DNA from: Aplysia californica | Taxonomy: Eukaryota | DNA length: 64,000 nt | Assembly (NCBI RefSeq): GCF_000002075.1 | Contig: NW_004797278.1 | Location: 2,094,009-2,158,008, forward strand | Direction of reading: 5' to 3' | Part shown: positions 120 through 61,900 of the stretch, piece by piece | Layout of the letters: each line of letters begins with the position of its first letter | How positions within the stretch are numbered: the first letter of the stretch is position 1 | Translations under genes and position numbers: made by a program | Notes under the pieces: generated by a model | Seen by the model: only the letters and a program-made list of their open reading frames with translations | Databases searched by the model: none | Told to the model about the DNA's origin: nothing

Positions 120-12160
<12,041 letters not shown>

Positions 12161-21600: not shown

Positions 21601-24600
21601 TGAGACAGCCGTACTGGTGATATCTGCTACCCTAAAGTAGGTATGCATCAGGCAGGTAAAACCTAAACTCTTACTGTCTGTGGAATATAATTGAATTCAA
21701 ACATTAAAGAAAAACAGATGGAGGCGGAGTGAGACTTAAAGGACTACAATGGTATCTACAGGATCAATAAAAATAGCTACTTCAAGAAACTTAGGACAGC
21801 AAACTGGTAAATGAAAAGAAAATTCATTTACCAAAGAATTACTTTGCCCTATAAACAACTTACAGTAAGAAGAAATATTTAAATGAAATTTATCCATATT
21901 TCTGATGTACTTTATCGTCCAAAAAAAGGAAATATTTATCCTATCTGGCAACACAAACAAACTAAAACTGGACTAGAAGTTGCTCCTGGTCATTTTCTGA
22001 GGCGTTACACAAGTCTGGTTTTCAGGTTACATATTCACATTGAACGAAGACAAAGTATAACAAATTTGAAAAAGAAGCATTTTCTGCACCGTGCACACAA
22101 AGAGTAAACTTTCTGTTTAACACAGAGCTTCTTTTTTTGTTTCCCCCTCCTCAATGACAGCAACTAGACAGTCAGTCTGATGTCGCGCACAAACTGTGCA
22201 GTCTGCTTCAAATCTGAGAGACTGCAATAGAGCTTTCTCTCAAGGGAAGTCACATGCTGCCACGTCTGTGTACAAAGAGTAGCGAAGCGTGGGCAGTGCT
22301 GAAGGACATGGTTGGCATCCTCTTGGTCGTGTCCACTTTCACAGATCGTGGACTCTTCCACTTTTAATTTAGTGTGCATATGGTGTTTGAGTCTGTTGTG
22401 GCCACAACGTAGTCAAAAGATTGTGACCTGGTCTGCTCCATTTAGCCTGTAGTAGGGGTCACGTCTGTTGTGTTTAGGGTGGGATTTTTTCATCTGTTTC
22501 TTAAGGTAGATTTTATTAGCGTTTTTGACTCTGAGAGATCCATGCCATCTTCAATCTGGATCATTTTGGCTCCTTCTTTAGCTAAATCGTCTGCTTTTTC
22601 ATTTCCATGAATGCCACAGTGACCAGGTATCCACTGCAGAGTTGAGTGGGCTTGGGAGCTTAGATCACTTAAGAGTGAAAGGAGTCGTCGTACTTGAGCT
22701 GATTGTGGCTTTTGGAGAGCTTGTAAGACATATTTGGCATCTGTGAGGATGACGGTGTTGGCTTCAGATTTTTGGTGATTCAAGAGAAGGGTGGCTGCTG
22801 TTTCGAGTGCTGATGTTTCTGCTTTGTAATTGGAAGATAGAGATCCTGTAGGGATGGAATGGCTTTCTGTTGACCCATCTATCCACTCTACGTAAATACA
22901 TCCACCACCTTTTCTGACTGCATCAGTTGCTGATTCATCTGTGTAAACTCGATTCCACCGGTTGCTTGGAAAGTTTCTGTCCAGGTAGTCGAGTGTCAGT
23001 GACTTGAGTATCGGAGGAGGGACTTCAGATTTGGTGCCAAGCTCTTCTAGGTTCTCTCGAATTTGAGGGGGGTGGCTAGTCTGAAGAGGGTGGACTTGAC
23101 ACGGGTCTAGTGGGGTTGGAGATTCTTCAAGAGAGATTTCAATTCCAGAGCTGGAGTGTCTGGCCATATGGAGGAAGCTTGTTCTTTTTAAGCGTTTGCT
23201 CTGGCTTTTTGAAGATCTATCCTTCATTGGGTGGGTTGGCATTCTTTTGACCTTTTCCTGATGAACAATCGCTTTCAGATCGCGTCTGTCGTTTAGGGGT
23301 TCTAACCCATTTAGTGTCTCCATGGCATGAATGGGCGTAGATCTCATTGCTCTCGTGATGATCCGTAGATTTCGATTCTGGATTCTCGCTACTTTGTGGA
23401 AGTTGCTGTCTGATGCTGTTCCCCACGCTGCGATACCATATTCCAGGACTGGGCGGACATATCCAACATAGGCGCCACGTAAGACAGAGTGGTTTGCTCC
23501 CCAATCTGACCCTGCCAACTTTCTAAGCAGTGCTGTTCTTCTGTTACCTTTACTTTTGCACCTCTCTGTTTGGGCTTGCCACGTTAGTCTTGGATCAAAC
23601 GTCACGCCCAAATAAGTGGGATTTGACTCGTGTTGTAGAGTGTTTCCATCAAGATGCAAGTTTACCTTTCAGGGTTTTGGTGAGAGGCTGAATGTTATGT
23701 ACGTGGTCTTAAGACAGAAAGTTTAATTACCAGTGTTGTGGACTGAAAATGATGAAACAAGAGAGTCCTCCTTCAGCTCCAAGGTGTAAACCAGTTTGAA
23801 CCTGTCAAGCAAGAATGATGAAAGATACTGTAAACTTATTTACTGCAGGATGCTGCTGAGACTTTACTCAGCCTTTCATGTTTAAGTAATAAATACACAC
23901 ACACATACACATCTGTGCACGCACACTCACACGCATACATACACATACACAATCACACACACACACACACACACACAACCATAAACTAACATGTTATTCA
24001 CTATCTTCAGGACTCCTGTACTGCACATCTGTATTTATGCAGAGGAAAGGCTCCATGTGCGCTAAAATCATACATGGGAAAAAAGAAATAAGTCTCTCAC
24101 TCATGCCTGGCTTCAGTAAGCTGAGCTCAATGGATAACTTTTTTCTCCTCAAAACTCATCTTACCTTTCTTCTGCTGCATTAGAAATCTTTGCTTAGTTG
24201 GACCTGTTAGTAAGAGTTGTATTTCCTCAAAGTACCATTCCTTCACAGATCATATCTTCTAGTACTAGAGTGGAGTCAGGTAACTTCGCCACTCTCAGTT
24301 AGCTTGCAATGAAACAAGCCTACATCCCCTCTATGCTCAACATGCATGACCCCTGTTTTGTCTGCAACTTTTCGTAGCCAGTGAAAAAAAAGAGTCCACT
24401 GATTGGCTTGCTTGCTAGTTGTACTTCAGCTGCTTTGTTCTTTTTTTTTTTTTTTCCTAGTGGATGTGATGATGGGGAACTTCGAAAGTCTTTGAGGGGA
24501 AATTTGCCATACTGGGAGATCATCTTATTTCATGATATGTAGATTATTGTTGTCTGTCTCATTATCCAATCCACTGCTAATAAAAAGAGAAAAGGCGATA

Positions 24601-46400: not shown

Positions 46401-46949
46401 TTAGAATAAAAGGGGCCAGAGTCCTATTACATGAAGCTTTTTTTCCACATGGGCACATCTTGCCAGAGACTGCGCTTAAACTGACAGCCAAGAGGAGACT
46501 CCTCAAAGTCATGACAGATAACAAATAACAGACCGACATGGCTGCAGGAAATAGTATATGTTCATCAATGCTGCAGAATAGTTAACTACAAACAAAGTTG
46601 AAAACGAAATGAAAAGGACAGATGAAAAGCAAAAGAACATCACAAATAATGGGAGAATGACATACGGAGTGAAGAAGGAAAGAGTGGAGGAAAAAAACGT
46701 GACCATAAAGACAAATGGCAACAAATTCTACACATTATGACAATATCTCATCAATGCCTCTGGAATGACTTGAACAATGTTATAATCTTATTAAACAATC
46801 AGCACATATAGAGCCTTCTTGATTCACCTGAAACTGTTTCACACTGTTTTACAACATTTCTAAATTGCTTGGTAGGGAAATGAGTAAATTGTAACTTGAG
46901 TACAGCAGAATAAATGTATCCCCCTCCCAAAACATCTACACTTGTCATG

Positions 46950-49900
46950 CTATGGCTCGTAGAGCTGCAGATCTAATTTCACAACAACTTCACCAGTTTC
47001 AACTTCATGGAGAATGAGCCTTTTAGTTATTGGTCCACGCCTGTCTCCACTCTGGTCTAGAACATCCTTAATGCGAACCTCAGTGCGGCCTAAGAAATCT
47101 GAGAATGAAAATAACAATTAAAAACATGGAATTTTGGGTCTACTACGTTAATAAGCATGTATACAATCAAATTATTCTAATACCTATGAAAAAATTTATT
47201 ACGAAACTATGTTAATTTATTCCTAAATGAAAATGCTTGGTTATCAGCCTCAATAAAACAGAAAATCTGTCAAATTATATCTTTATACTGTATCGATAAG
47301 TCGCTCAAAGATACAGAAAAACATGTTCGGGCAAGTGAGTGAGTCACCAATGACTAGGACATACCGTTAGGAGAATACAGGTCCCGATCATACACCGTAA
47401 AGCAGAGGGTGTCCCTCTCTACATCCCGTAAAAGAAACTGCATTGATGCATTCCATCGAGGGTTTAAAGTTCCAGGAATAACTTTTGTGCGATGTTCTTG
47501 TGACCCCATGCTAACCTCACAGTATGGGTCACTTTTACCTGAGGAATAAATAAATATGAAGTTTTTCACAACCAAATGAGGTACTTCACTTTTCCATCTT
47601 TTAAATATGGCAGACAATTAAAAACAGCACTAACAATTTGAGAAGTCAAAAAACAATGATGCAAATTCTTAAATTCCTGAGGTGACATTTATCCTTTCCA
47701 AATACACAGACACAAGTTGATTATCACTGAAGAATAATTTGAGAAACAAATTCCTCTCAATTTTCATCTGTTTTGAAGCAAATAATTTTAGGCAGTTCTT
47801 GTAAAATCCATTATTGAAGAATTCTTTCTTCACACCACGTGTAAACATGAAGGCTGCCAAAAGCATTATTAATTTTAAAAACCACTTTAAGAATTCATGA
47901 AACTCCAGAAAATAGTTATTAAGTTAATGACAACAGAACAGCTATATATAAGATAGCCCAAAATAGATAAATGATTTTGATAAAGGAATCAGAACACTTA
48001 AATTCAGGTAGCATTATGAAAGTGTGCACGAACAATGCTCCATAAATTTTACATCTCTCGATATATGGCATATTCACAACAACATTAGACATAGGTACAA
48101 ACATTGTTTATGTTTGGCAACTGTCTTGGTTCAACAATGCATCTGTCCAATATTGAACATTTCCTGAAAATGGGGTTAGTTTCAAGACTCTTAAAGTAAA
48201 AAAAAACACAGAGAATGAGTACATTTTGTTTTCTTTGAATAAGTAAATACTACAGAGAAAAACACTAGCTCACATTTTAAAAAAAACCTTAACAGATGGT
48301 ATTTGTCTAAAATTGTAACTGCATCAAAAGATGTTATTTGTTTGACGATGAATTGGCCTCAAAAGACAGTACTTGCTATATCATTATGCTGCATTGGCAG
48401 ACCGTATAACAAAAGCGCATCTAATCTTCTCCAAAAATCACTGGACGGAAATCTAATCTTTAGCATAATTATGCAAGGCCAGCAAAATGATGAAAGTAAC
48501 TTTCTAACGTAAAAATGCACACACAAAGACACAATTTCTGTATTTCCTGCTCATGACTGTATAGAAGTATGTGGAGTAGATTGCTCATAGAGAGGTTGAT
48601 GCTGCATCACAAAATTCTATGTCAATAAATACACAGAAAGCTCATCAAAGTTAGATGACTACCATACTCCTGTAAATATGTAACACTCAAACAAACACCC
48701 AAAAATTCATTTCAAGGATAGAAAAATGGTAAGAGTAGAGGGAAGCCAAGAAAATGGAAATGGCTTGAAGGTCATATTTGAGTCCATTTGAGCTACTTCA
48801 TCATTACTAGTTTAAATGGTACACCCCTTGNNNNNNNNNNNNNNNNNNNNNNNNNNNNNNNNNNNNNNNNNNNNNNNNNNNNNNNNNNNNNNNNNNNNNN
48901 NNNNNNNNNNNNNNNNNNNNNNNNNNNNNNNNNNNNNNNNNNNNNNNNNNNNNNNNNNNNNNNNNATCCGACTACACACATAAAGTTCATTTCTAAGGCA
49001 GACCTCTGAGGTTTGGGATGGAGGTTTGTCTTTGGCAGGCCTAACTCTCATTTTACAGACACACTGGCAATGAGTTGACAGGATAGAAGACAAAGTAAAA
49101 GAGAAAAGATGACATCCTATGCCAGAGAGTTCACAGCAATGGAATGGCACCCCACCAATGTGCATCTGTAATCTGTATCACCCCCCCCCCCCTCCTTCCA
49201 CCCGCCAGTTTAGAGAGAAACCGATAGAATGACAGAATTAGAAAAATCAAATAAACCAATGATACATTTGCAACACTACAAACAAGCTCAGAAGATCTCC
49301 GAAAATAACTAACAGAGTTACAGGTAACAAAAGAAAATCGAGGATCTCTTTTATGCAAGTCAGAAATGCCAGCTACTAAATTCAGTCAAAGCAAAGTGTC
49401 CAAACTAAATACAAGTACATGTACTTGCCAAGGCAAATATTGCAGAAATCTAACCCAATTATTTTCTCTCTTCCATAAAACCTGACCTGAGTGGTCCCGC
49501 CTTTGTCTTCACGAGAACTATTACAACACCCACTGACATAAACTAACTCTGTTTGTTATTCCTGTTTTGTCTTCTTGCTTATCCTAACATTAAGAGGCCA
49601 TTATTGTATCAGATTGTATCAATGACTCTCTTCTTGAGTTCTCTCTTTTCTTACAAAAGTTACAAAAATACTAAACCATGAACCAGTCAAGAGGAAATAA
49701 GGCATGGATATAAAGTTTCTTTTTCCCTTTCTTCGGTCAATAACCTTGTCTAGGCAAACAAGCTAAATCATACTGACAAATTACTAACTGATAACCATCA
49801 GATTCCTTGTCCAGCAAAAATATTACATCCGTATGTTATCAAAAATGAAAGAGTAACTTTGTACATTTTCTTTCCTGTTTATTCATAACAGAATATTTCA

Positions 49901-52900
49901 GAAATACCATTAAGATGTTATGGTAAAGTACACATGAAACAATGATTAAATCTATGAATTCATACCAATGGCAAGTCGAAATAATATATTTATGATACAC
50001 TGATATTAAAATGAGTATTTTCCATTCAAAATCAATTTTATTCCACAAAGTTGTGAGTAAAAAATAGAACCTCACTCCTGATAAACAACGTGAATCAGTA
50101 TGACTAAGAGAAAAGCAAAATAACAGCTGTACACCTGAGAAACAGGTGCCAGATTCATAACTGTTATACAATCATAAACCTACACTACTGCCAGTAAGAT
50201 CTAACTTGTCAAATTCAAGAAAGAATTAACCAGACAAACATTACCCCTCTTTTGACTAAAGGTTCCATACATACATACCACTACTTCAAAATGCTTAATT
50301 AAAGAAAAATGGGTTAAATAGGAAAAGGTTTCTTACGTAACCAACATTCATGCAGTAGAATGCTTAAATGCACAACCTGATGTAAAACATCAACTTACCG
50401 GACTGATCAGAGGCTTTCAAGTGGCAAGCCTCTTGAATGACAACAAGGATTCTGCCAACACTAGGGCGCTTCACTAACAGAATAAAACAATAAACCAAGC
50501 GTTGCAGTGCATGCAGTTCAAACTCAAATGATGCTCAGCAGGAAACTAAGGTACAGCAAAACAAGAGACAACGAAAAGATTAAGAGCCCGAAGTGAGGGA
50601 CGTGCAGGTGGTGAAATCCCCAAGATGCAATGACAAGCACAAGTAACATAAAAACAACAGAACACACGGAACTGAGTACAATAATAAATAATCATCAGTG
50701 CAATAGATAATGAAAGGGTTAAGACTGACACTCACACAGCTTAAAAAAGATTCCCATANNNNNNNNNNNNNNNNNNNNNNNNNNNNNNNNNNNNNNNNNN
50801 NNNNNNNNNNNNNNNNNNNNNNNNNNNNNNNNNNNNNNNNNNNNNNNNNNNNNNNNNNNNNNNNNNNNNNNNNNNNNNNNNNNNNNNNNNNNNNNNNNNN
50901 NNNNNNNNNNNNNNNNAACAAAAATGAGAAAAAATGTGTAACTTAAAACACGACTGAAAAGGTGCGGTGGTAAAAAAAGAAGCATATTGTTTCCTCTTCT
51001 AAAGTCACAATTTTTCAATCACAATGATGGAAATGGAGATTTCCAGCTGGGAAATTATGAATACTATTACTATACAAAAAACACTTGGCCTACAGGAAAA
51101 GAACACCTCCTATATCCCAAGCAGCTTCAAATCAAGCCAACCAACAAAAAAAGTATGTCTTTATTTTTCTTCCCTCAGCCCTCTATTCTGACTCAAAACC
51201 TGTCGTAAGGACATACCCAGGGTTTGCCTTTTTGAGGTCTTTTAACAAATTTACTTTCCAGAAAACATATGATTGGAAAAGAAAAATGCCCATACTGTGG
51301 TCATATTTCTTATCGTTTTTCCATTTATGGAAAGGAGGGGGGGAGAGTGAAATCTAACAATTTAACATAACCAGACTGCGTCGAAGGACTCATGTATCAC
51401 CTGAAACCTTTATGCCTAGTAAGGCAGGAAAATAAAAAACCTCCGGAGCAGAACTGAAGAATGGCAGTGATTGGCATGCAGTACAACACCGGTACACAGA
51501 GGTTCTGGTGCACAAACTATCAACACAAGACTGAGGGTGGGTAGAGGCTGACAAGACTATGCACTCTTCAGAGTCATCTTCTGAACTCAAAGTGAGGTGT
51601 GAATGAGTTGCGTCTCTTCAAAAAACAAGAATTTAAGGACATTTCGCCTTGTTATGAAATTACATGACGGGTCAACATTTGTATTTCTCATTTGAAAGAA
51701 GGACGTTTAAAGTCCAACAAAGCATCTTCAAATAACAGAACAATTATTTTTGGTACTTGTTGCTGAACCCAAAAATCATTGCCTTTAGTATGAGATAACC
51801 AAATTATTGGGTACTCAAAATATTGTAATTCTTTTACCAAAGAAGTATTCACAATGGGTGTAAGTAAAAAGATTTACCAAGTACCACCGGTTTTGTTTGG
51901 AAATGAATCTAGTTCATGAATTTTACTGCACATAAATCAATACATAAGAAACTGATAAACTAATAACTTCCTTTACACAGCCTCACTTTGGCTCAGAGAG
52001 AACTCTGCCATAGACTTCTTCACCCCATGAGAAAGCCTCAAACCTACCGGCATCAAGAGGAGGCCTTAGGCCCACTCCTTCCTCCACCACCACCAGCGCT
52101 CTGCCAACTGGTTTTGCTCGCAAGGCTACAAGTGCCATTTACAACAGAGAAGAGAGTGTCAACATGTTTTACTTTCTTGTCACTTCAGACACTGACAGTT
52201 CCATTCAACACATTAAAGCCAGTACAATGTACACAAGACACCTTAGTATTTATTTGACTCACATTTGAAGGGAGAAGAAGGAAAAAGGTAAGTGCCTTAG
52301 CACTCTGCTGATAAGACTACATAACCTTTTCGGAGAAAGTTTGCATGGGGTCAAGGGTAAATACAAATTTTTTAAACCTTTACATAGAAAAAAATAAAGT
52401 AGATCAGTACTTTATACACAGAGAAAAAGATTGAAGAAAAAAACAGGACAAAAAGGTAGAATGAGGTAGAGGACAGAAAACAATGGAAATGAAAGATGGG
52501 TGAATTTCGGAATACAGGAGATGGTTAGAAAGACAGAAAAAGACAGGAAAAAAGTAATAAAGACTAAGTCACAGTAACTAAACTGATATTAAAATAACAG
52601 CACGATTTGAAATGCTTAAGGACTAGAACACTAAAAAAAAAATGTACCCAAAAATCAAGGTACAATACCAAGTTTCAAAAATAAAACTTGAAAAATGGCT
52701 TTTTAGGTCACCACTTTGAAAAGGACAAAGATCTGTATGCAGATCTGTTAAAACTGTCCAATTGTTAACATTTTTTAAATGTAATAATCATCATCATCAT
52801 GGCATAAGAAAAAAACTTTGAAACGTAATTCAACTGACTGTGCTGAAAGCACATTAAGACATTGTTTAAAAATGAAGCTTTTTTTTTACTGATTATGATG

Positions 52901-55900
52901 AAAGTGGTAAAATACACTAGACCTGTCAAACTCCAAAACAACATAATAAATACATGAATATTCAAGAGTAAACACCTTCAAACTAAGCTTACTGCCCCAA
53001 AATTCTTACTGATTAGTCAGACTAAGTGTAGGCTCTGTCAGAGTAAATAAACTCCAAAATATTCATAACACGAAACATCTCTAGACAATGTCATAAAAAG
53101 CAACTCCAAACACCCCCCTCCTCCCATAAACACAATTCATGTCATATTCTTGTTCAGGTGGATTTCAAACAATGATAGAATACACACTTTTCCTTCTTAC
53201 CTCCTATAGAGCCTTAAGGTAAACTGTTTAATAATTGTACCTATTTTAAAAAAGAAAGAGCTATATAAGCATTATAATATAAAAACAGAATTAATCTCAT
53301 TCGCTTTCACCTACCCGAGTGGGCTCTCTCCAGCTTTCTCTTTGCTTTGTCTTTGTACTGTTTGGAGGCTGCTTCTATTTCTCGGATCCAGGTATCCCTG
53401 TTTCGCATGAAGGTATATTTTAAAATGCTAAATAAACTGACCATTTCATAAAAACTACTTTGTAGGACATATTTTAAAAATATTTTTACATATGCCCTCT
53501 AGTACTGCAAAATCTTACATTCCTCACTCAATATCAACTTGCAGGCTAACGGCATGGTTGAAGAGAAAACAGCTATTATGCAGTTTTACTACTCTCGCAC
53601 ACCTACCATTCCACATGAGGAGTCCACGAGAAAAACGGGAATAGTCACAAACTGAAAATCAAGAGGGTATCAATTTTGAACGCTTGTTGACTCATAACTG
53701 TATTTCTGCTCAGCATTAGGTTGATTATTGTTGTTCGATTTCCAACAAACATATCACATAAACCACCAGTCAAACAAACATCCATGAGTCTACAAGGTTT
53801 GAAAATTGACACCCTCATTATTTCCAGTTTGCGACTATGCCCGTTTTTCCCGTGGACCCCTCATATGTGAAACTTGCCAAAGAGAAGATATCAAAGTACA
53901 CATTATATGATAACCAAAACAACTTCTTCTCAGGGATACTCAGAAGAGCACAAACTTTCTTTCACTCCTGAACTCATAGAGGCTGCAGGATTTTGAAGTC
54001 ATGAAACAGAAAAGTCTCTGACTGTAAATGTTTTAAGCCCCATCGAAACAATTTAGAGCATTATAATATTTCTGAGGCAGGGGTAATCTCTAAAAGATTC
54101 AGAAGACTGAAATTTGATGGAAGTGCTAAATGTTTCAACAGAGAGCAGCAAGTAATGTAACGTAAACCAGACCTCTCTACATGGGACACAGCTTTCAGGT
54201 TGATGATTCTGTCACTTGTGATGTGGAACAAAGTAGGATCTGTGTCATCAACAGGCTTCTTTACCGTTACTTCATTCAGGAAAATGGGCTGAAAAGAAAA
54301 CAATATTTGATTTGGTTGGAGTTCTAGTTTTGGCACCACTTTTACAGTTTCCTAAAGATATCAAACTGAGGTAGAGCATGGTGAATAATAATGATTGTGA
54401 ATAGACTCCAAACAACCCAAGATCCAAAACAACTTGAACCAAAGAAAACAGGAAATGCAGCAAGTAACACACTTAAGTTAAACAGACCCAAGTCACATTT
54501 ATATGTCAATGGTACGAGCTAGAATACACGCACATAGAATTTGATCTTTGTTATCTATGTCTCAATCTATTGTCATTTTCTCAGTTAGGCTATATAAAAT
54601 TATACATATGACAAGTAGTGTCTGAGAATTACAATAACACACAAACAAATGCCATGAAGAAGCAGAATCATATTGAAAATTGCACTAGGATTCCAAATCT
54701 GTAAGGAGACATACTTCTCTTTTCTTTTTCTTCAGAAATAACATTATTAACAAAATAAATAAAAGAGTAAGGAGTATCTATCTGCAAATGACACCCATTT
54801 CCATTATTCTGAACTCATCAATGGCTAGAACGGCGTGTTCCTATGGCAGTTACCAGTTTATTAGAGAGAATATCACGAATGGTATTTTCACTAGTATCCC
54901 TAGACAGCAGTTGTTTATTGACAAAGATATACTTACAACACGATACATTTTAAACTGTGTACTTGTATCAAAGAGGTGAACAGTGCTGAAGGTAGTGCCC
55001 AAAGGACGTGATGTGGTGGCAAGCATGAGGAAATCATTGAACAAAAATCCTATAAGCTCCTTGTTGCTTTTTGCCTGTCAGAAGGGGTGAGGAAAAGACA
55101 CACTTGAAATAATTGACATGTACAACCGAAAATAAAATAGGAACTCTTTGAATCACAAACAAAAACAAATAATGATGGAGTGACAGAGATCACACACTGA
55201 CTCAATTCTCCATTACCTTGGAGATTATTCGACGATAACAAAAGATGAAAAAACTGTGTTCCCTGTAAATGCACAAAGATAAGTCATGTAGAGTTCAAAT
55301 ACATTATCATTTTTTTTTACCGGACCAATCACACACAAATGAATAGAAGGATATACCATTTCAGAAATAACCCCCCCCCCCCATTCTCATATCTACTTCT
55401 TTTCATGAAAGAGAATAAGAGAATAAACATCTATAATATTTCAAAACTAGGAGAAATGTGTTCATCCTGTACAGATAAACTCTTCCAAAGTACATAAATG
55501 TCTGAGTAAACATAACATTATGTGTCCCAAGAGTTTCTCTGTTCTATCTGATGCCACTTACTAATTTCGTCTGAGCAGACCTTACAATAAGCAGCTTCTT
55601 TTCAAGATTACAGTCTTCATATAATGAACCTTCTCCTTAAACTAGTGGGTTTTTTTTTTTTTACAGCAGTCTCCTCCCAAAATGAAATGTGTGACTGCAA
55701 AAAGCTGAATTCTCTTTTAATAAAAGGAACAACATGTTTTACATTTAATTCATGAATTTCGATTTCACCGATTCCATTTTAAGGTTTTGACATTTATGAG
55801 TTTTGACATTTTATTTGACCAACTTTTAAAGAGCTACAACTGACATCAATCTCACCATAGAACATATCAATAGACTGAGCATTTCAAAGTTTCGATTTTT

Positions 55901-58900: not shown

Positions 58901-61900
58901 TTCAGGTGGAAGAAACATTAACTTGTTTATTATATTCCCTAGCAAACAGGTCATATGTGGATGGTACTTTATCCACAGGAATATTATATTACTATTAGAG
59001 ATGATAAAAACATTTGTTCCATATGAAACTCACACTTTCACATAAAATATCCCCAATGATGAAGATGACTCCATTCTTCCCACACATCTTTTTCCTGACT
59101 CGAAGGGCTCTGCAACATAGAGGAAAGACAAATTAGCCTCACATTTTAAAAGTAAAAAAAAAAAAGCCAGTACTATAAAATAACCACACTGTAAGAGTGT
59201 ATATGACCTTTGAGGTAAAATTCTCAAAAAGACACCCAAGAGCAACAAACTGAAAAACAAAACAGTTGTTACTGTTCAGGTAATTAAATGTAGCTTTTAC
59301 TCGATTAAAAAATTCTTATGGTTTCAATTTTGTTTGACATTCATCTAATTGCAACAGATTCCATTATGGCGATTCACACAATAAAAATAAAGAGGACTCC
59401 TTTTCCTTCTTCTTTTTCCTGTGTTCTTCAGCTTGACCTTACAGTAAAAAACAAGAAGCTTTGACTCGTTAACACCTGAAAGTTATGTATGCCAACTATT
59501 TATGCCTCTGAAGGAAAAGCGGCCATTTTTGATAATAAATCAACATTTCTTGCAATTTGAGTGTACAAAGGGCGCTGGGCTTTGGCTGTGAAAAATGGTC
59601 CTAGATACATTGCATTGTTTTAAAAGAGTACCGGTGGTCGAGTCGTTAGTGAATCGTAATTTACAACACAACAGAAAAACAACAAACAACCCATTAATTG
59701 AACTCACTGTAACAGCTTTTTATTACACACAATGAGCTCCTCCCAGTTGACAAATATCTGGTTCACTTGTTCCTTTGGCATGACGTTACCACTAATCAAT
59801 GGCTTCTTAAACACCTGCAGACATAAAAAGACGTTGAGAGATGTTAGGACAACAGTGAAAGTAAAAAGTTCAACTTGAGAACTAAATTTGAAAGACACTG
59901 AAATAAAAAGTAAGGACCATGGGAAAGAAAGAACAAACCACACCAGAGCACCAGCCAGCCAACCACCTACCGGAGAAATACAACAAGTGAACAGAAGCAA
60001 CAAGTGAAATACAAAAACCCTTTAGAGAAAAGAAACTTGACCAACATTTTTTGCCAATACTTTCTATTAAATACCCCCACCCCCCCACCCCCCCACCCCC
60101 AAACCCGCCCCAAAATTTCAGACCATTGCAAAAGGTTTTATGTTGTTGGGCTTTTTTGGTAAGTGTTTTAGAACGCTCGCAACAACATGAGGTCATTTGA
60201 GTGCATGGGACACATCAAACATTTTCAGTTTGGTAGAAAATAATTTTGAATTTCGCCCAGATGGCAGCCAAAGCCTACTCATATTGATTTTGGACCATCA
60301 AGGGATATTTAAAGGGCTCAACCTGAACACGGGACCTTCCAGATTTTTACGCCCTTATCCAAGAAGGCTAGGTGTTAGATCTTACCTACCCTAAGAACAG
60401 GGGTGTGGCTGAAAGACAGCAGTAAGAGGGATTCAAGGAGTAGCAGAAGAAAGGCTATAGAAAGAGTCAGGAGCCAAGAGGGTGCAAAAAGGGGGAGGGG
60501 GGGGGCAGATAGTGGAGACGAAAGCAGGTGTCAGAGTATGGTTAGAGAGTAGGAAAGGAGGTGAAAGGAGAAAATTTTAGAGAAGAAAATTTTTGGTTGC
60601 TGTCAAGTTTTGAACCTGGGACCTATTGAATGAGAGGTGAATACCGTAACCTCTAGACCATGAGAGCCCCCCCAAATCAAGTTTATACGACTCCAGATGA
60701 TTTCTCATATGAAAATGTGACACTTTCTTCTTTCCTTTACTAGTATACCTCTGCTTCCTCCTCATTGAACGGTGTTGTGAAAAAAGAAAAGCTAAATTAT
60801 GTTTAGCTTCAGTAAGAGACTTTTGTTACAAGAGTGTAATTTTTTTTTTTTTCTCCCTTGCCCATTTATATGAGATTGACGCCATCTGATTAGTAGAAAA
60901 AAGTGCATATGATTGTGTCCAATAGTGTATTACATGCATACTTAGTATATCAATTAACTGTAATAGCGGATAGAGATTCCAGGATTATATATGTAAGTCA
61001 TTGATCTGAGAGAGGTGATAATTTTAACATTAATAGTGGTGATGAGTGATGATGAGGGATTTCGTTTAAGTACTGTTAGCGTTAGTCCTATCTTCCTCTG
61101 CTCCAATGAGTCACGAGGGACGTGGGCACCCTCTATCCCGTTCCCTACTGGAACCATCTTTACGGTCACCATGAAGTTCCGAAATGGTGGGCTCAGTCTC
61201 TGCTAAGGTGACATTGTTAGTGTTAGCCTATTCTATCGGGCCAAGACAAGTGGAGAGAGGAGCTAAGTGGGAAGACAGTATAGTGGCAGGTATGTTGGGG
61301 GTATTTGTAAGCGGGTTGTAAATAGCAAGTTGGCAGATTATGATCTTTACAATGGCAGCATTCTACTCCCTGATCCTTTGCCCCTAGTAATCTTTTCGAG
61401 TCCGATTGAGCTTGGAGAGATTCTGGCGCAGGATCCTCGAGCCAAAATCGAGAGGGCACAATTTTACAAGAGTGTAATTAATTAACACAAAAAGAAGGAA
61501 GAGAGAGTTCAGAGACTAGGACTATTGATATTTGATAGGACATCAGAGCACGTAGGTAAAAAAAAAAGAAAAAAAAAAAAAAAAAAAAAGAACAATTTGT
61601 CGCCCACAAGGTACAGGTTCACTCTAGTATTAACCGAAGACTGTGGTCAAAGGGCCAAAGTACAAAAGGCATTTCCTTGTGAGGAATCTGGCAGATTAAA
61701 AGAAAGGAAATGAAGGCAGTAACCAGGGTAAAAAAAAAAAATCAGACAGGGGTTGAATATCTGAACAGAAAATCATTTTGGAAACAAAATTTAAGAGTAA
61801 TGTTAGGGGCAAATCTTTCAATTTCTTTTTTATTCAGCTTTTAAAATTTGTCAACATACTACTCACTCAGCAGCTTCTCATTGTTAAATCAGACAGTGTT

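What the first reader, a model, noticed from the sequence alone, without database searches (positions are those of the whole stretch)
47040..52125. Exon choice appears to toggle a full five-aspartate Ca2+ site in the C2 domain
Seen: with exon B the domain reads [13 protein letters not shown]...[14 protein letters not shown], placing Asp at all five canonical C2 Ca2+-ligand positions. With exon A loop 1 reads [13 protein letters not shown], with Leu at the first ligand position, the Asp shifted by one, and two prolines added. Known: these loop 1 and loop 3 aspartates coordinate Ca2+ in synaptotagmin/PKC-type C2 domains; as I recall, human ITSN1 is degenerate in loop 1. Inference: splicing yields Ca2+-sensitive and Ca2+-attenuated versions of a Cdc42 GEF/endocytic scaffold.
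Basis: partly seen in the sequence, partly recalled or inferred. Interest (0 to 1): 0.75.

Follow-up and report, generated by a model that had tools for sequence, protein, structure and literature searches.

The report
Alternative first-strand exons in intersectin C2
A sea-hare gene for the endocytic scaffold intersectin has two duplicated, interchangeable small exons for the start of its C2 domain, and only one of them carries the complete set of calcium-binding aspartates, a pattern that recurs in many other invertebrates.

Summary
On the minus strand, exon A (52048-52125, 78 nt) and exon B (50399-50473, 75 nt) are homologous. Both have GT-AG borders and enter and leave in phase 1. Each encodes strand 1 plus loop 1 of the intersectin C2 domain, ahead of shared exon 3 (47365-47538). 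Exon B puts Asp six residues before the SDPY Asp, the spacing of synaptotagmin-1 D172/D178; exon A has Leu there and Asp one position later. Both N gaps lie in introns.

Contigs in two runs from two studies join the PH exon to A to exon 3 and skip B. Exon B has no RNA support here. Its support is the RefSeq Aplysia californica model, near-identity across four heterobranch genera, and strong splice sites.

The pair is old. In molluscs the downstream type has Asp at -6 in 22 of 22 genera and the upstream type in 0 of 19. Fifteen species have separate single-exon isoforms of both kinds, amphioxus included. Many models carry both exons in tandem, so strict exclusivity is unproven. Calcium binding is untested.

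My searches found no paper describing it.

The parts
53315..53397 (-). Last PH-domain exon (..[28 protein letters not shown]), which ends in phase 1 with G|gtaggt.
   Evidence: One search gives the sequence and donor. The loose end of the run X12 contig behind 52126 matches 53316-53345. The upper border at 53397 is inferred from the acceptor cag|G only.
52048..52125 (-). Exon A (upstream type, 78 nt): PH-C2 linker, C2 strand 1 and loop 1 ([25 protein letters not shown]). It has Leu at -6 and Asp at -5 from the SDPY Asp.
   Evidence: Spliced contigs in runs X7 and X12 join it to exon 3. It is identical to that part of P0163.
50399..50473 (-). Exon B (downstream type, 75 nt): the same segment ([24 protein letters not shown]), with Asp at -6.
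   Evidence: It is identical to that part of RefSeq XP_035825622.1 (P0185). Depth is 0 in the two RNA-like runs laid. It is single copy in G000.
47365..47538 (-). Shared C2 exon 3 (G-KSDPYCEV...[10 protein letters not shown]), which carries the second loop-1 Asp and two loop-3 Asp.
   Evidence: Pfam C2 E 2.2e-15. Best PDB match is human intersectin 2, 3jzy, E 2.9e-18.
46950..47098 (-). Last coding exon ([13 protein letters not shown]...LQLYEP, stop TAG at 46950-46952). It carries the fifth Asp; the 3' UTR continues below.
   Evidence: The joint 47098/47365 is.
48831..48965 (.). Assembly gap inside the intron between exon B and exon 3.
   Evidence: It is spanned by the spliced contigs.
50759..50916 (.). 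Assembly gap inside the A-B intron, 285 nt upstream of exon B.
   Evidence: It is spanned by the spliced contigs.
51321..51360 (-). C-rich element in the A-B intron, a candidate docking site (low confidence).
   Evidence: It takes part in all of the six strongest duplexes of the RNAduplex scan of 47300-53400. Duplex energies are -44.0 and -51.8 kcal/mol.
53101..53140 (-). G-rich element in the PH-A intron. Pairing with the C-rich element would loop out exon A (candidate, low confidence).
49171..49210 (-). G-rich element in the intron between exon B and exon 3. Pairing with the C-rich element would loop out exon B (candidate, low confidence).
50349..50515 (-). Two sense-strand UGCAUG hexamers flanking exon B: 50510-50515 lies 37-42 nt upstream and 50349-50354 lies 45-50 nt downstream.
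   Evidence: Only 6 sense-strand copies occur in the 17-kb gene part, and the window-wide count is at chance level.

Best explanation
The window holds the 3' part of the single intersectin gene of a sea hare, on the minus strand. An ancient tandem duplication left two alternative exons, A and B, each encoding the PH-C2 linker, beta-strand 1 and Ca2+-binding loop 1 of the C-terminal C2 domain. The rest of the domain is shared. A transcript that takes B has Asp at both loop-1 ligand positions and, with the three loop-3 Asp, the full synaptotagmin/PKC-type pentad. A transcript that takes A has Leu at the first position, an Asp displaced by one residue and two prolines. The inference is that the cell makes two long intersectins with the same Cdc42-GEF module but C2 domains of different Ca2+ dependence of membrane binding.

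Shown: the exon anatomy, use of A in RNA, conservation of both exon types, and the Asp contrast.

Inferred: use of B in this species, the difference in Ca2+ or lipid binding, and how the choice is made.
For: Anatomy and phase.

Gene identity: Pfam C2; best solved relative human ITSN2 DH-PH-C2, 3jzy, E 1.6e-72 with the Lymnaea tail; P0185 carries EH, SH3, RhoGEF, PH and C2 Pfam families.

A is used: one spliced contig in each of the 2 runs that laid anything (X7, 1009 nt, depth 19.9; X12, 1202 nt, depth 5.8; two studies) runs exon A to exon 3 to the last exon. In X12 the contig also continues upstream into the PH exon.

B is a real exon:
- The RefSeq model XP_035825622.1 uses B and skips A. P0163 uses A. 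The two proteins otherwise differ only by a 483-aa insert.
- [17 protein letters not shown] is identical in Aplysia, Physella and Biomphalaria and has one change in Lymnaea.
- Its donor is a perfect gtaagt and its acceptor tract is T-rich.

Orthology of the two types across mollusc classes: position 6 of the strand-1 core is Ile in 14 of 14 non-heterobranch upstream exons and Val or Leu in 20 of 20 downstream exons.

Asp at -6: 22 of 22 mollusc genera for the downstream type and 0 of 19 for the upstream type (my count).

Separate single-exon isoforms of both kinds occur in 12 mollusc species, 2 nemerteans and Branchiostoma floridae. Intron-free Logan contigs of 5.3-5.9 kb show the downstream-only form in oysters.

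Both types fold as C2 with the alternative segment as strand 1 and loop 1 (AlphaFold2 of stand-ins P0284 and P0285).
Against: - No RNA evidence for exon B in this species. Depth is 0 over B in the two runs that laid (contigs drop rare forms). The two raw poly-A runs laid nothing anywhere. No transcript-derived protein fragment of this species turned up.
- The RefSeq model may rest on homology rather than reads.
- Both exons are multiples of 3. Many public models (Biomphalaria 5 of 5, several oysters, Octopus, Lingula, Tachypleus and others) carry both in tandem, so exclusivity is not enforced by frame.
- Gastropod upstream exons keep Asp or Glu at -5 in 8 of 8 genera, and bivalve ones keep Asp at -4. 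The A form may therefore still bind Ca2+.
- The alternative segment also includes the PH-C2 linker and strand 1, so the selected difference need not be Ca2+.
- No binding was measured, and AlphaFold2 does not model Ca2+.
Confidence: 0.6

Rival explanations
1. The selected difference is not Ca2+ ligation. The two exons would instead tune something else encoded by the same 25 residues: the PH-C2 linker length, strand 1 packing against the DH-PH module (GEF autoregulation), lipid head-group preference, or a protein contact.
For: - The exons differ along their whole length, not only in loop 1 (8 of 24 identical).
- Type-specific residues sit in strand 1 (Ile versus Val at core position 6).
- In Lingula and Tubulanus tandem models the first exon carries the Asp, and in horseshoe crab neither does. 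The Asp contrast is therefore not universal.
- Reviews only say that the vertebrate C2 'may bind Ca2+' (passages in PMC12559987, and PMC3753573).
Against: - Asp at -6 is invariant in 22 of 22 mollusc downstream exons and absent in 19 of 19 upstream exons.
- The same contrast is seen between the two amphioxus versions (QPSDIN versus QPCNSN).
- The shared exons keep the other four Asp.
Confidence: 0.2
2. The exons are not mutually exclusive. B is the working strand 1 whenever present, and A is an optional cassette that either extends the linker (A+B) or stands in for B (A only).
For: - Both exons are 3n (78 and 75 nt), and joining A to B reads through in frame with Val at the junction.
- Tandem models are common: C. 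gigas X1, X2, X3 and X6; 7 C. virginica isoforms; 6 Octopus sinensis isoforms; Biomphalaria 5 of 5 models.
Against: - In this species the RNA contigs join A directly to exon 3, and the RefSeq model joins the PH exon directly to B.
- No A-to-B joint was seen, though B was not covered at all.
- The tandem models may be artefacts of gene prediction. The intron-free Logan contigs I saw for oysters are downstream-only.
Confidence: 0.12
3. Exon B is silent in this species: a conserved-looking relic that annotation pipelines pick up by homology.
For: Depth is 0 over 50396-50579 in both runs that laid. No transcript-derived fragment carries B.
Against: - A and B share only 42% of bases, so the duplication is old.
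- B keeps an open frame, perfect splice signals and a 17-residue stretch identical to Physella and Biomphalaria. That is not expected of a neutral relic.
- Contigs show presence, not absence.
Confidence: 0.08

Closest known systems
Dysferlin C2A versus C2A variant 1 (alternative first exon; Fuson et al. 2014, Structure 22:104; PDB 4ihb and 4iqh)
   Same: One gene makes two versions of a C2 domain by alternative splicing. One is described as Ca2+-dependent and the other as Ca2+-independent in lipid binding. I saw a passage and the reference entry in PMC10002499. Both PDB entries appear among the fold matches.
   Different: In dysferlin an alternative first exon with its own promoter replaces a large part of the N-terminal C2A. 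Here two internal tandem-duplicated 75-78-nt exons swap only strand 1 and loop 1 of a C-terminal C2. I did not read the Fuson paper itself.
Vertebrate intersectin-1/2 long-form C2 domain (human ITSN2 C2, PDB 3jzy)
   Same: Orthologous domain and the same DH-PH-C2 order. Exon 3 aligns end to end (E 2.9e-18). The AlphaFold2 model of the Lymnaea type-II form superposes on 3jzy at rmsd 1.4 A, TM 0.95, 55% identity.
   Different: All vertebrate models listed show a single version, without either loop-1 Asp (LKPCRSH-GKSNPY or LKACKPN-GKSNPY). The loop resembles the Asp-less amphioxus version (QPCNSN) more than the Asp version.
Tandem-duplicated mutually exclusive exons controlled by competing RNA structures (human ATE1 exons 7a/7b)
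   Same: Two homologous adjacent exons. In ATE1 an element between them competes for pairing with elements on either side (abstract of PMC7797038 in the listing). Here a C-rich element between A and B can pair with G-rich elements in either flanking intron.
   Different: The ATE1 elements are conserved and were tested. The elements here are G/C-run motifs that are common in this window. They have no conservation check and no experiment.
Piccolo C2A splice variant (recalled, not from a call; only the PDB name 1rh8 appears)
   Same: Alternative splicing changes the Ca2+ response of a C2 domain.
   Different: As I recall, that case is a short insertion far from the ligands acting through a conformational switch, not an exchange of the ligand-bearing loop.

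Membership tests
Intersectin long form (ITSN-L) | C-terminal DH-PH-C2 module after the EH, coiled-coil and SH3 domains | tested here: met
   DH, PH and C2 exon ORFs lie on the minus strand between 46950 and 62400. P0185 and P0163, which contain the window's exons, carry EH, SH3, RhoGEF, PH and C2 Pfam families. The best PDB match is ITSN2 DH-PH-C2, 3jzy.
Ca2+-binding C2 domain of the synaptotagmin/PKC type | Five acidic ligands: two in loop 1, six residues apart, and three in loop 3 (D-x-D-x5-D) | tested here: met
   This holds for the B form only. It has D at -6 and 0 ([10 protein letters not shown]) and [11 protein letters not shown]. The spacing equals Syt1 D172/D178 and D230/D232/D238 (PMC7581758 passage). 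The equivalence rests on spacing and on HMMER and Pfam matches, not on a residue-level alignment to Syt1 that I saw.
Ca2+-binding C2 domain of the synaptotagmin/PKC type | The same five ligands in the A form | tested here: not met
   The A form has Leu at -6 and Asp at -5.
Ca2+-binding C2 domain of the synaptotagmin/PKC type | Measured Ca2+ binding or Ca2+-dependent phospholipid binding | not testable with these tools
   This needs recombinant protein.
Tandem-duplicated mutually exclusive exons | Adjacent homologous exons of like length and identical phase | tested here: met
   The exons are 78 and 75 nt, phase 1 in and out, 1574 nt apart. Each is the other's best match in the window.
Tandem-duplicated mutually exclusive exons | Mature transcripts carry exactly one of the two | tested here: inconclusive
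   A-only is shown in 2 runs. B-only rests on the RefSeq model alone. No test for A+B was possible here. Tandem models are frequent in other species.
Tandem-duplicated mutually exclusive exons | Both copies conserved in other species | tested here: met
   Both types occur in gastropods, bivalves, a chiton and Octopus. Alternative versions also occur in nemerteans and amphioxus.
Exon choice by competing RNA structures | One element able to pair with either of two others so that one exon is looped out, conserved or validated | tested here: inconclusive
   The geometry and duplex energies fit. However, G/C runs are common (28 runs of 6 or more in the window), and a similar G-C-G cluster sits inside one intron at 60080-60673. 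No other genome was at hand to check conservation.

The most novel reading that the evidence does not exclude
The pair is an ancient bilaterian splicing switch on intersectin's C2 domain. One exon version carries a canonical first Ca2+ ligand and one does not, and both were kept for over 500 million years in molluscs and present in amphioxus. Vertebrates kept only the Asp-less version and then also lost the SDPY Asp, which would explain their 'degenerate' C2. In the sea hare the choice would be made by a C-rich intronic element between the two exons. It would pair with a G-rich element either upstream of A or downstream of B, looping one exon out. Rbfox-type UGCAUG sites around B could add tissue control.
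Probability: 0.25. Interest if true: 0.75.

Novelty: new member of a known kind. Interest (0 to 1): 0.55.

Why it matters
Whether intersectin's C2 domain senses Ca2+ is still written as 'may' in the papers I saw (passages in PMC3753573 and PMC12559987). The vertebrate domain lacks two of the five ligands. Invertebrates offer a natural experiment: the same Cdc42-GEF scaffold with either a canonical or a non-canonical loop 1, chosen by splicing, in an animal (Aplysia) whose identified synapses allow direct tests. If the two forms differ in Ca2+-dependent membrane binding, intersectin would couple Ca2+ entry to actin and endocytic machinery in an isoform-specific way, and the vertebrate form would be the Ca2+-independent survivor.

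It also corrects a textbook-style statement. The review PMC3753573 describes invertebrate intersectin as having the short form's domain organisation, whereas long DH-PH-C2 forms are widespread in invertebrate annotations.

Tried and rejected
Raw poly-A RNA runs X21 and X22, labelled with the same species, laid 0 reads on the whole 5.5-kb stretch (about 14.8 million records each). They are no test of either exon.

Searches for transcript-derived protein fragments of this species gave nothing at 100% identity. These were the 220-aa tail of P0185 (30 hits) and exon 3 alone (24 hits). The short hits are single-exon ORFs from genomic contigs.

No third copy of the exon was found in the window outside the gaps. 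A copy hidden in a gap cannot be excluded.

The repeat finder inverted repeats (14 pairs of 14-26 nt) are at the level I expect by chance from rough arithmetic. I dropped them.

The G-rich / C-rich / G-rich arrangement is kept only as a low-confidence candidate. The six window copies of GGAGGGGGG (expected 0.06) share no flanks. G runs are frequent on the gene's sense strand (9 in 17 kb).

UGCAUG is not enriched in the window overall (45 copies against 40.3 expected). Only its placement on both sides of exon B is notable.

Exons A and B alone give no Pfam hit because they are too short.

The window's own A-form and B-form C2 domains were not folded or searched as joined models. P0163 and P0185 exceed the length limit of structure prediction, and a cut piece is not among the inputs that tool lists. 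The whole stored proteins P0284 (Lymnaea, downstream type, 87% identical to the sea-hare tail) and P0285 (unnamed, bivalve-like upstream type) served as stand-ins. P0285's loop differs from exon A's, so the fold says little about exon A itself.

I saw no residue-level alignment to synaptotagmin or PKC. The ligand equivalence rests on spacing.

Literature searches found no paper on alternative C2 exons of intersectin. The single 'intersectin' hit in PMC9013439 is the word 'intersecting'. Supplementary files were not consulted and might list such exon pairs in genome-wide catalogues. Subscription papers are not covered.

The M17-aminopeptidase reading of ORF 4813-5157 got no Pfam support.

Full report
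WHAT IS THERE

The finding lies in the 3' part of a gene on the minus strand. ORF pieces between 62400 and 46950 read as DH, PH and C2 segments. Exon 3 of the C2 region (47365-47538) matches Pfam C2 at E 2.2e-15. Its best solved relative is human intersectin 2 (3jzy, E 2.9e-18).

Two public proteins contain the window's exons letter for letter:
- P0185 is RefSeq XP_035825622.1, 'intersectin-1 [Aplysia californica]', 2178 aa.

They differ only by a 483-aa insert and by the segment discussed here.

EXON ANATOMY

- The last PH exon ends at 53315 with ..CAC TCG G|gtaggt, in phase 1.
- Exon A is 52048-52125 (78 nt): acceptor ttgtag|, donor G|gtaggt.
- Exon B is 50399-50473 (75 nt): acceptor tgttag| after a T-rich tract, donor G|gtaagt.
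- Exon 3 is 47365-47538.
- The last coding exon is 46950-47098.
- The introns are 1190, 1574, 2860 and 266 nt, with gap lengths estimated.
- A and B both enter and leave in phase 1, and both are multiples of three.

The split codons give ..[35 protein letters not shown] with exon A. With exon B they give ..[34 protein letters not shown]. These are exactly the readings of P0163 and P0185.

The two N gaps lie in the B-to-exon-3 and A-to-B introns. No coding frame crosses them. The 1793-nt piece between them, which carries exon B, is single copy in the assembly.

IS THE LIKENESS OF A AND B REAL?

Taken alone it is modest: 8 of 24 residues and 30 of 72 bases. In a tblastn of the exon A peptide against both strands of the window, exon B is the best non-self hit at E 0.017 (PAM30) or 0.094 (BLOSUM62).

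Position, phase, length and splice signals, and above all the comparison with other species described below, make the homology secure. No third copy was seen outside the gaps.

EXPRESSION

I laid four runs on 46900-52400.

The two raw poly-A runs of the same species label (X21, X22; about 14.8 million records each) laid nothing at all. They are no test.

The two contig-based runs come from different studies and carry different organism codes:
- X7: contig of 1009 nt, depth 19.9.
- X12: contig of 1202 nt, depth 5.8.

Each holds one spliced contig that runs from exon A (52045+3 to 52126) to exon 3 (47365 to 47535+3) to the last exon (to 47098). The skipped ends are CT..AC, which is GT..AG on the gene's strand. 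The part of the X12 contig beyond 52126 is the PH exon.

Exon A is therefore expressed, and the A-form message skips exon B. The bin that holds exon B has depth 0 in both runs. Contigs drop rare forms, so this shows nothing about absence.

Searches for transcript-derived protein fragments of this species found none for either form. In this species, exon B's use rests on the RefSeq model alone.

THE CA2+-LIGAND POSITIONS

A passage in PMC7581758 lists the synaptotagmin-1 C2A ligands as D172, D178, D230, D232 and D238. That is two loop-1 Asp six residues apart and a loop-3 D-x-D-x5-D.

Exon 3 and the last exon give SDPY and [11 protein letters not shown].
- Exon B supplies Asp at -6 from the SDPY Asp, completing the pentad.
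- Exon A has Leu at -6, Asp at -5 and two prolines.

The equivalence rests on spacing and on profile matches. I did not see a residue-level alignment to synaptotagmin.

Vertebrate ITSN1 orthologues read LKPCRSH-GKSNPY (or LKACRSN in rays and sharks). Human ITSN2 in 3jzy reads LKACKPN-GKSNPY.

OTHER SPECIES

A profile-free search with exon 3 (1723 proteins at E 0.001 or better, best 150 listed) was followed by a search with the C2 region of the abalone protein P0059 (1148 hits, best 120 listed). Together they returned intersectin long forms from many invertebrates. Three cluster look-ups added isoforms. Reading the residues before G-x-S-D-P-Y gives the following picture.

(a) Molluscs have two exon types.
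- The upstream type resembles A. Its strand core is GRLLVII.EGI.L, with Ile at core position 6 in 14 of 14 non-heterobranch sequences and Val in the 3 heterobranchs.
- The downstream type resembles B. Its core is GRLLVV..E...L, with Val or Leu in 20 of 20.
- Same-type sequences of different classes are more alike (0.70 identity, 240 pairs) than the two types within one species (0.615, 12 pairs).
- The duplication therefore predates the split of gastropods, bivalves, chitons and cephalopods.

(b) The downstream type has Asp at -6 in 22 of 22 mollusc genera. The upstream type has it in 0 of 19 (Leu, Ser, Thr, Lys, Asn or His instead). These are my counts, with tandem models read as if the first exon were joined to exon 3.

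(c) The upstream type is not simply 'dead'. Gastropods keep Asp or Glu at -5 in 8 of 8 genera. Bivalves keep Asp at -4 in 8 genera, with one unnamed sequence having Asn.

(d) Exon B is strongly conserved. [17 protein letters not shown] is identical in Aplysia, Physella and Biomphalaria and has one change in Lymnaea. Exon A is likewise conserved (GR[AV]LVVVEEG[VL]GLRP[PA]LD).

(e) Separate isoforms with only one or only the other exon are annotated in 12 mollusc species:
- Aplysia californica, Physella acuta, Haliotis asinina, Gigantopelta aegis and Babylonia areolata;
- Crassostrea gigas, C. virginica, Octopus sinensis and Dreissena polymorpha;
- three Mytilus species.

The same holds in the nemerteans Tubulanus and Lineus (three versions in Lineus). 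In Branchiostoma floridae, isoform X2 reads QPCNSN and eight other B. floridae isoforms read QPSDIN.

(f) Intron-free Logan contigs of 5.3-5.9 kb show the downstream-only form in oysters.

(g) Against strict exclusivity, many models carry both exons in tandem. These are Biomphalaria (5 of 5 models), four C. gigas isoforms, seven C. virginica isoforms, six Octopus isoforms, and also Liolophura, Pinctada, Ylistrum, Saccostrea, Lingula, Tubulanus, Paralvinella, Tachypleus, Nymphon and an ostracod. I cannot tell from proteins alone whether these are real messages or prediction artefacts.

(h) The Asp contrast is not universal. In Lingula the first exon has the Asp and the second does not. In Tubulanus both have it. 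In horseshoe crab neither does.

FOLD

Two stored proteins served as stand-ins.
- P0284 (Lymnaea, downstream type): mean pLDDT 88.1. The alternative segment forms strand 132-142 and a 12-residue loop 1, with block pLDDT of 92-95.
- P0285 (unnamed, bivalve-like upstream type): mean pLDDT 83.7. It forms strand 205-215 and an 11-residue loop 1, with block pLDDT of 81-88.

The P0284 model's best structural match is the human ITSN2 C2 (3jzy; rmsd 1.4 A, TM 0.95). Ca2+-bound C2 domains of CAR4, E-Syt and Munc13-1 follow. Both types therefore fit a C2 fold. The models say nothing about ion binding.

HOW THE CHOICE MIGHT BE MADE

None of the classical enforcers applies:
- The A-B intron is long, so steric hindrance is excluded.
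- All sites are GT-AG.
- Both exons are 3n, so including both or neither stays in frame.

An RNAduplex scan of the sense strand of 47300-53400 put one trio on top. A C-rich element in the A-B intron (51321-51360) can pair with a G-rich element in the PH-A intron (53101-53140; -44.0 kcal/mol), which loops out A. It can also pair with a G-rich element in the B-to-exon-3 intron (49171-49210; -51.8 kcal/mol), which loops out B. This is the geometry described for human ATE1 (abstract of PMC7797038, seen in the listing).

Several observations weaken it:
- The core GGAGGGGGG occurs 6 times in the window against 0.06 expected.
- There are 28 G or C runs of six or more in the window, and G runs are common on the gene's sense strand.
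- A similar G-C-G cluster lies inside a single intron at 60080-60673.
- The flanks of the copies are unrelated.
- I had no second genome for a conservation test.

I keep it as a candidate at roughly one in five.

Exon B is also flanked by UGCAUG 37-42 nt upstream and 45-50 nt downstream, two of only six sense-strand copies in the 17-kb gene part. This hints at Rbfox-type tissue control and is likewise untested.

WHAT IS KNOWN

The closest described case is dysferlin, whose alternative C2A versions are reported as Ca2+-dependent and Ca2+-independent (passage and reference in PMC10002499; PDB 4ihb and 4iqh).

Tandem-duplicated exon substitutions are a recognised, mostly ancient class (abstract of PMC9741552, listing).

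For intersectin I found no paper on alternative C2 exons. The one apparent hit was the word 'intersecting'. Supplementary files and subscription journals were not searched.

The review PMC3753573 describes invertebrate intersectin as having the short form's domain organisation (passage), which the annotations above contradict. Both it and PMC12559987 treat Ca2+ binding by the C2 domain as a possibility, not a result.

The isoforms themselves are already in RefSeq for many species. The novelty is in recognising the pattern, not in the sequences.

VERDICT

I file it as a new member of a known kind, of moderate to good interest. It turns the open question of whether intersectin's C2 domain senses Ca2+ into a direct comparison of two natural isoforms.

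Noticed in passing
window 50349-50354 and 50510-50515 (minus strand): UGCAUG hexamers sit 45-50 nt downstream and 37-42 nt upstream of exon B. They are two of six sense-strand copies in the 17-kb gene part, and the window-wide count is at chance level.
   Followed up: partly
window 49171-49210, 51321-51360, 53101-53140: A G-rich, a C-rich and a G-rich element sit one in each of the three introns around exons A and B. They form the strongest predicted duplexes of the region. A comparable G-C-G cluster lies at 60080-60673 within one intron.
   Followed up: partly
window 22490-27178 (minus strand): ORFs of a retroelement, LINE-like, lie downstream of the intersectin gene. They give an RNase H Pfam hit (E 1e-12) and an endonuclease/exonuclease/phosphatase hit (E 1.5e-7).
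   Followed up: partly
P0163 versus P0185 (public proteins of this gene): Besides exon A versus B, the two models differ by one 483-aa insert after residue 1028 of P0163.
   Followed up: no
P0432, P0433, P0436 and others (Dreissena polymorpha isoforms): An extra 8-residue segment (VPSLKGKG) sits between the alternative exon and exon 3 in some isoforms. It would lengthen loop 1 and move the Asp away from -6.
   Followed up: no
P0393-P0403 (Lineus longissimus isoforms): Three different versions of the strand-1/loop-1 segment occur in one annotation: IPSDDN in 10 isoforms, MPCQRNAS in 1 and IVANNK in 1. This suggests a three-exon cluster.
   Followed up: no
P0282 (Physella acuta isoform X3): This isoform ends right after the PH exon (..KLERAHSN) and so lacks the C2 domain altogether.
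   Followed up: no
window 51981-52010 and 51571-51600 (minus strand): A 10-bp perfect stem (CAAAGUGAGG / CCUCACUUUG; -33 kcal/mol for the 30-nt windows) starts 38 nt downstream of exon A's donor and closes about 400 nt further into the A-B intron.
   Followed up: no
window 48171-48562, 49681-49864, 51155-51380: Run X7 holds short unspliced contigs (151-226 nt, depth 4.7-7.8) inside the introns. They may be pre-mRNA or DNA carry-over, and none covers exon B.
   Followed up: no
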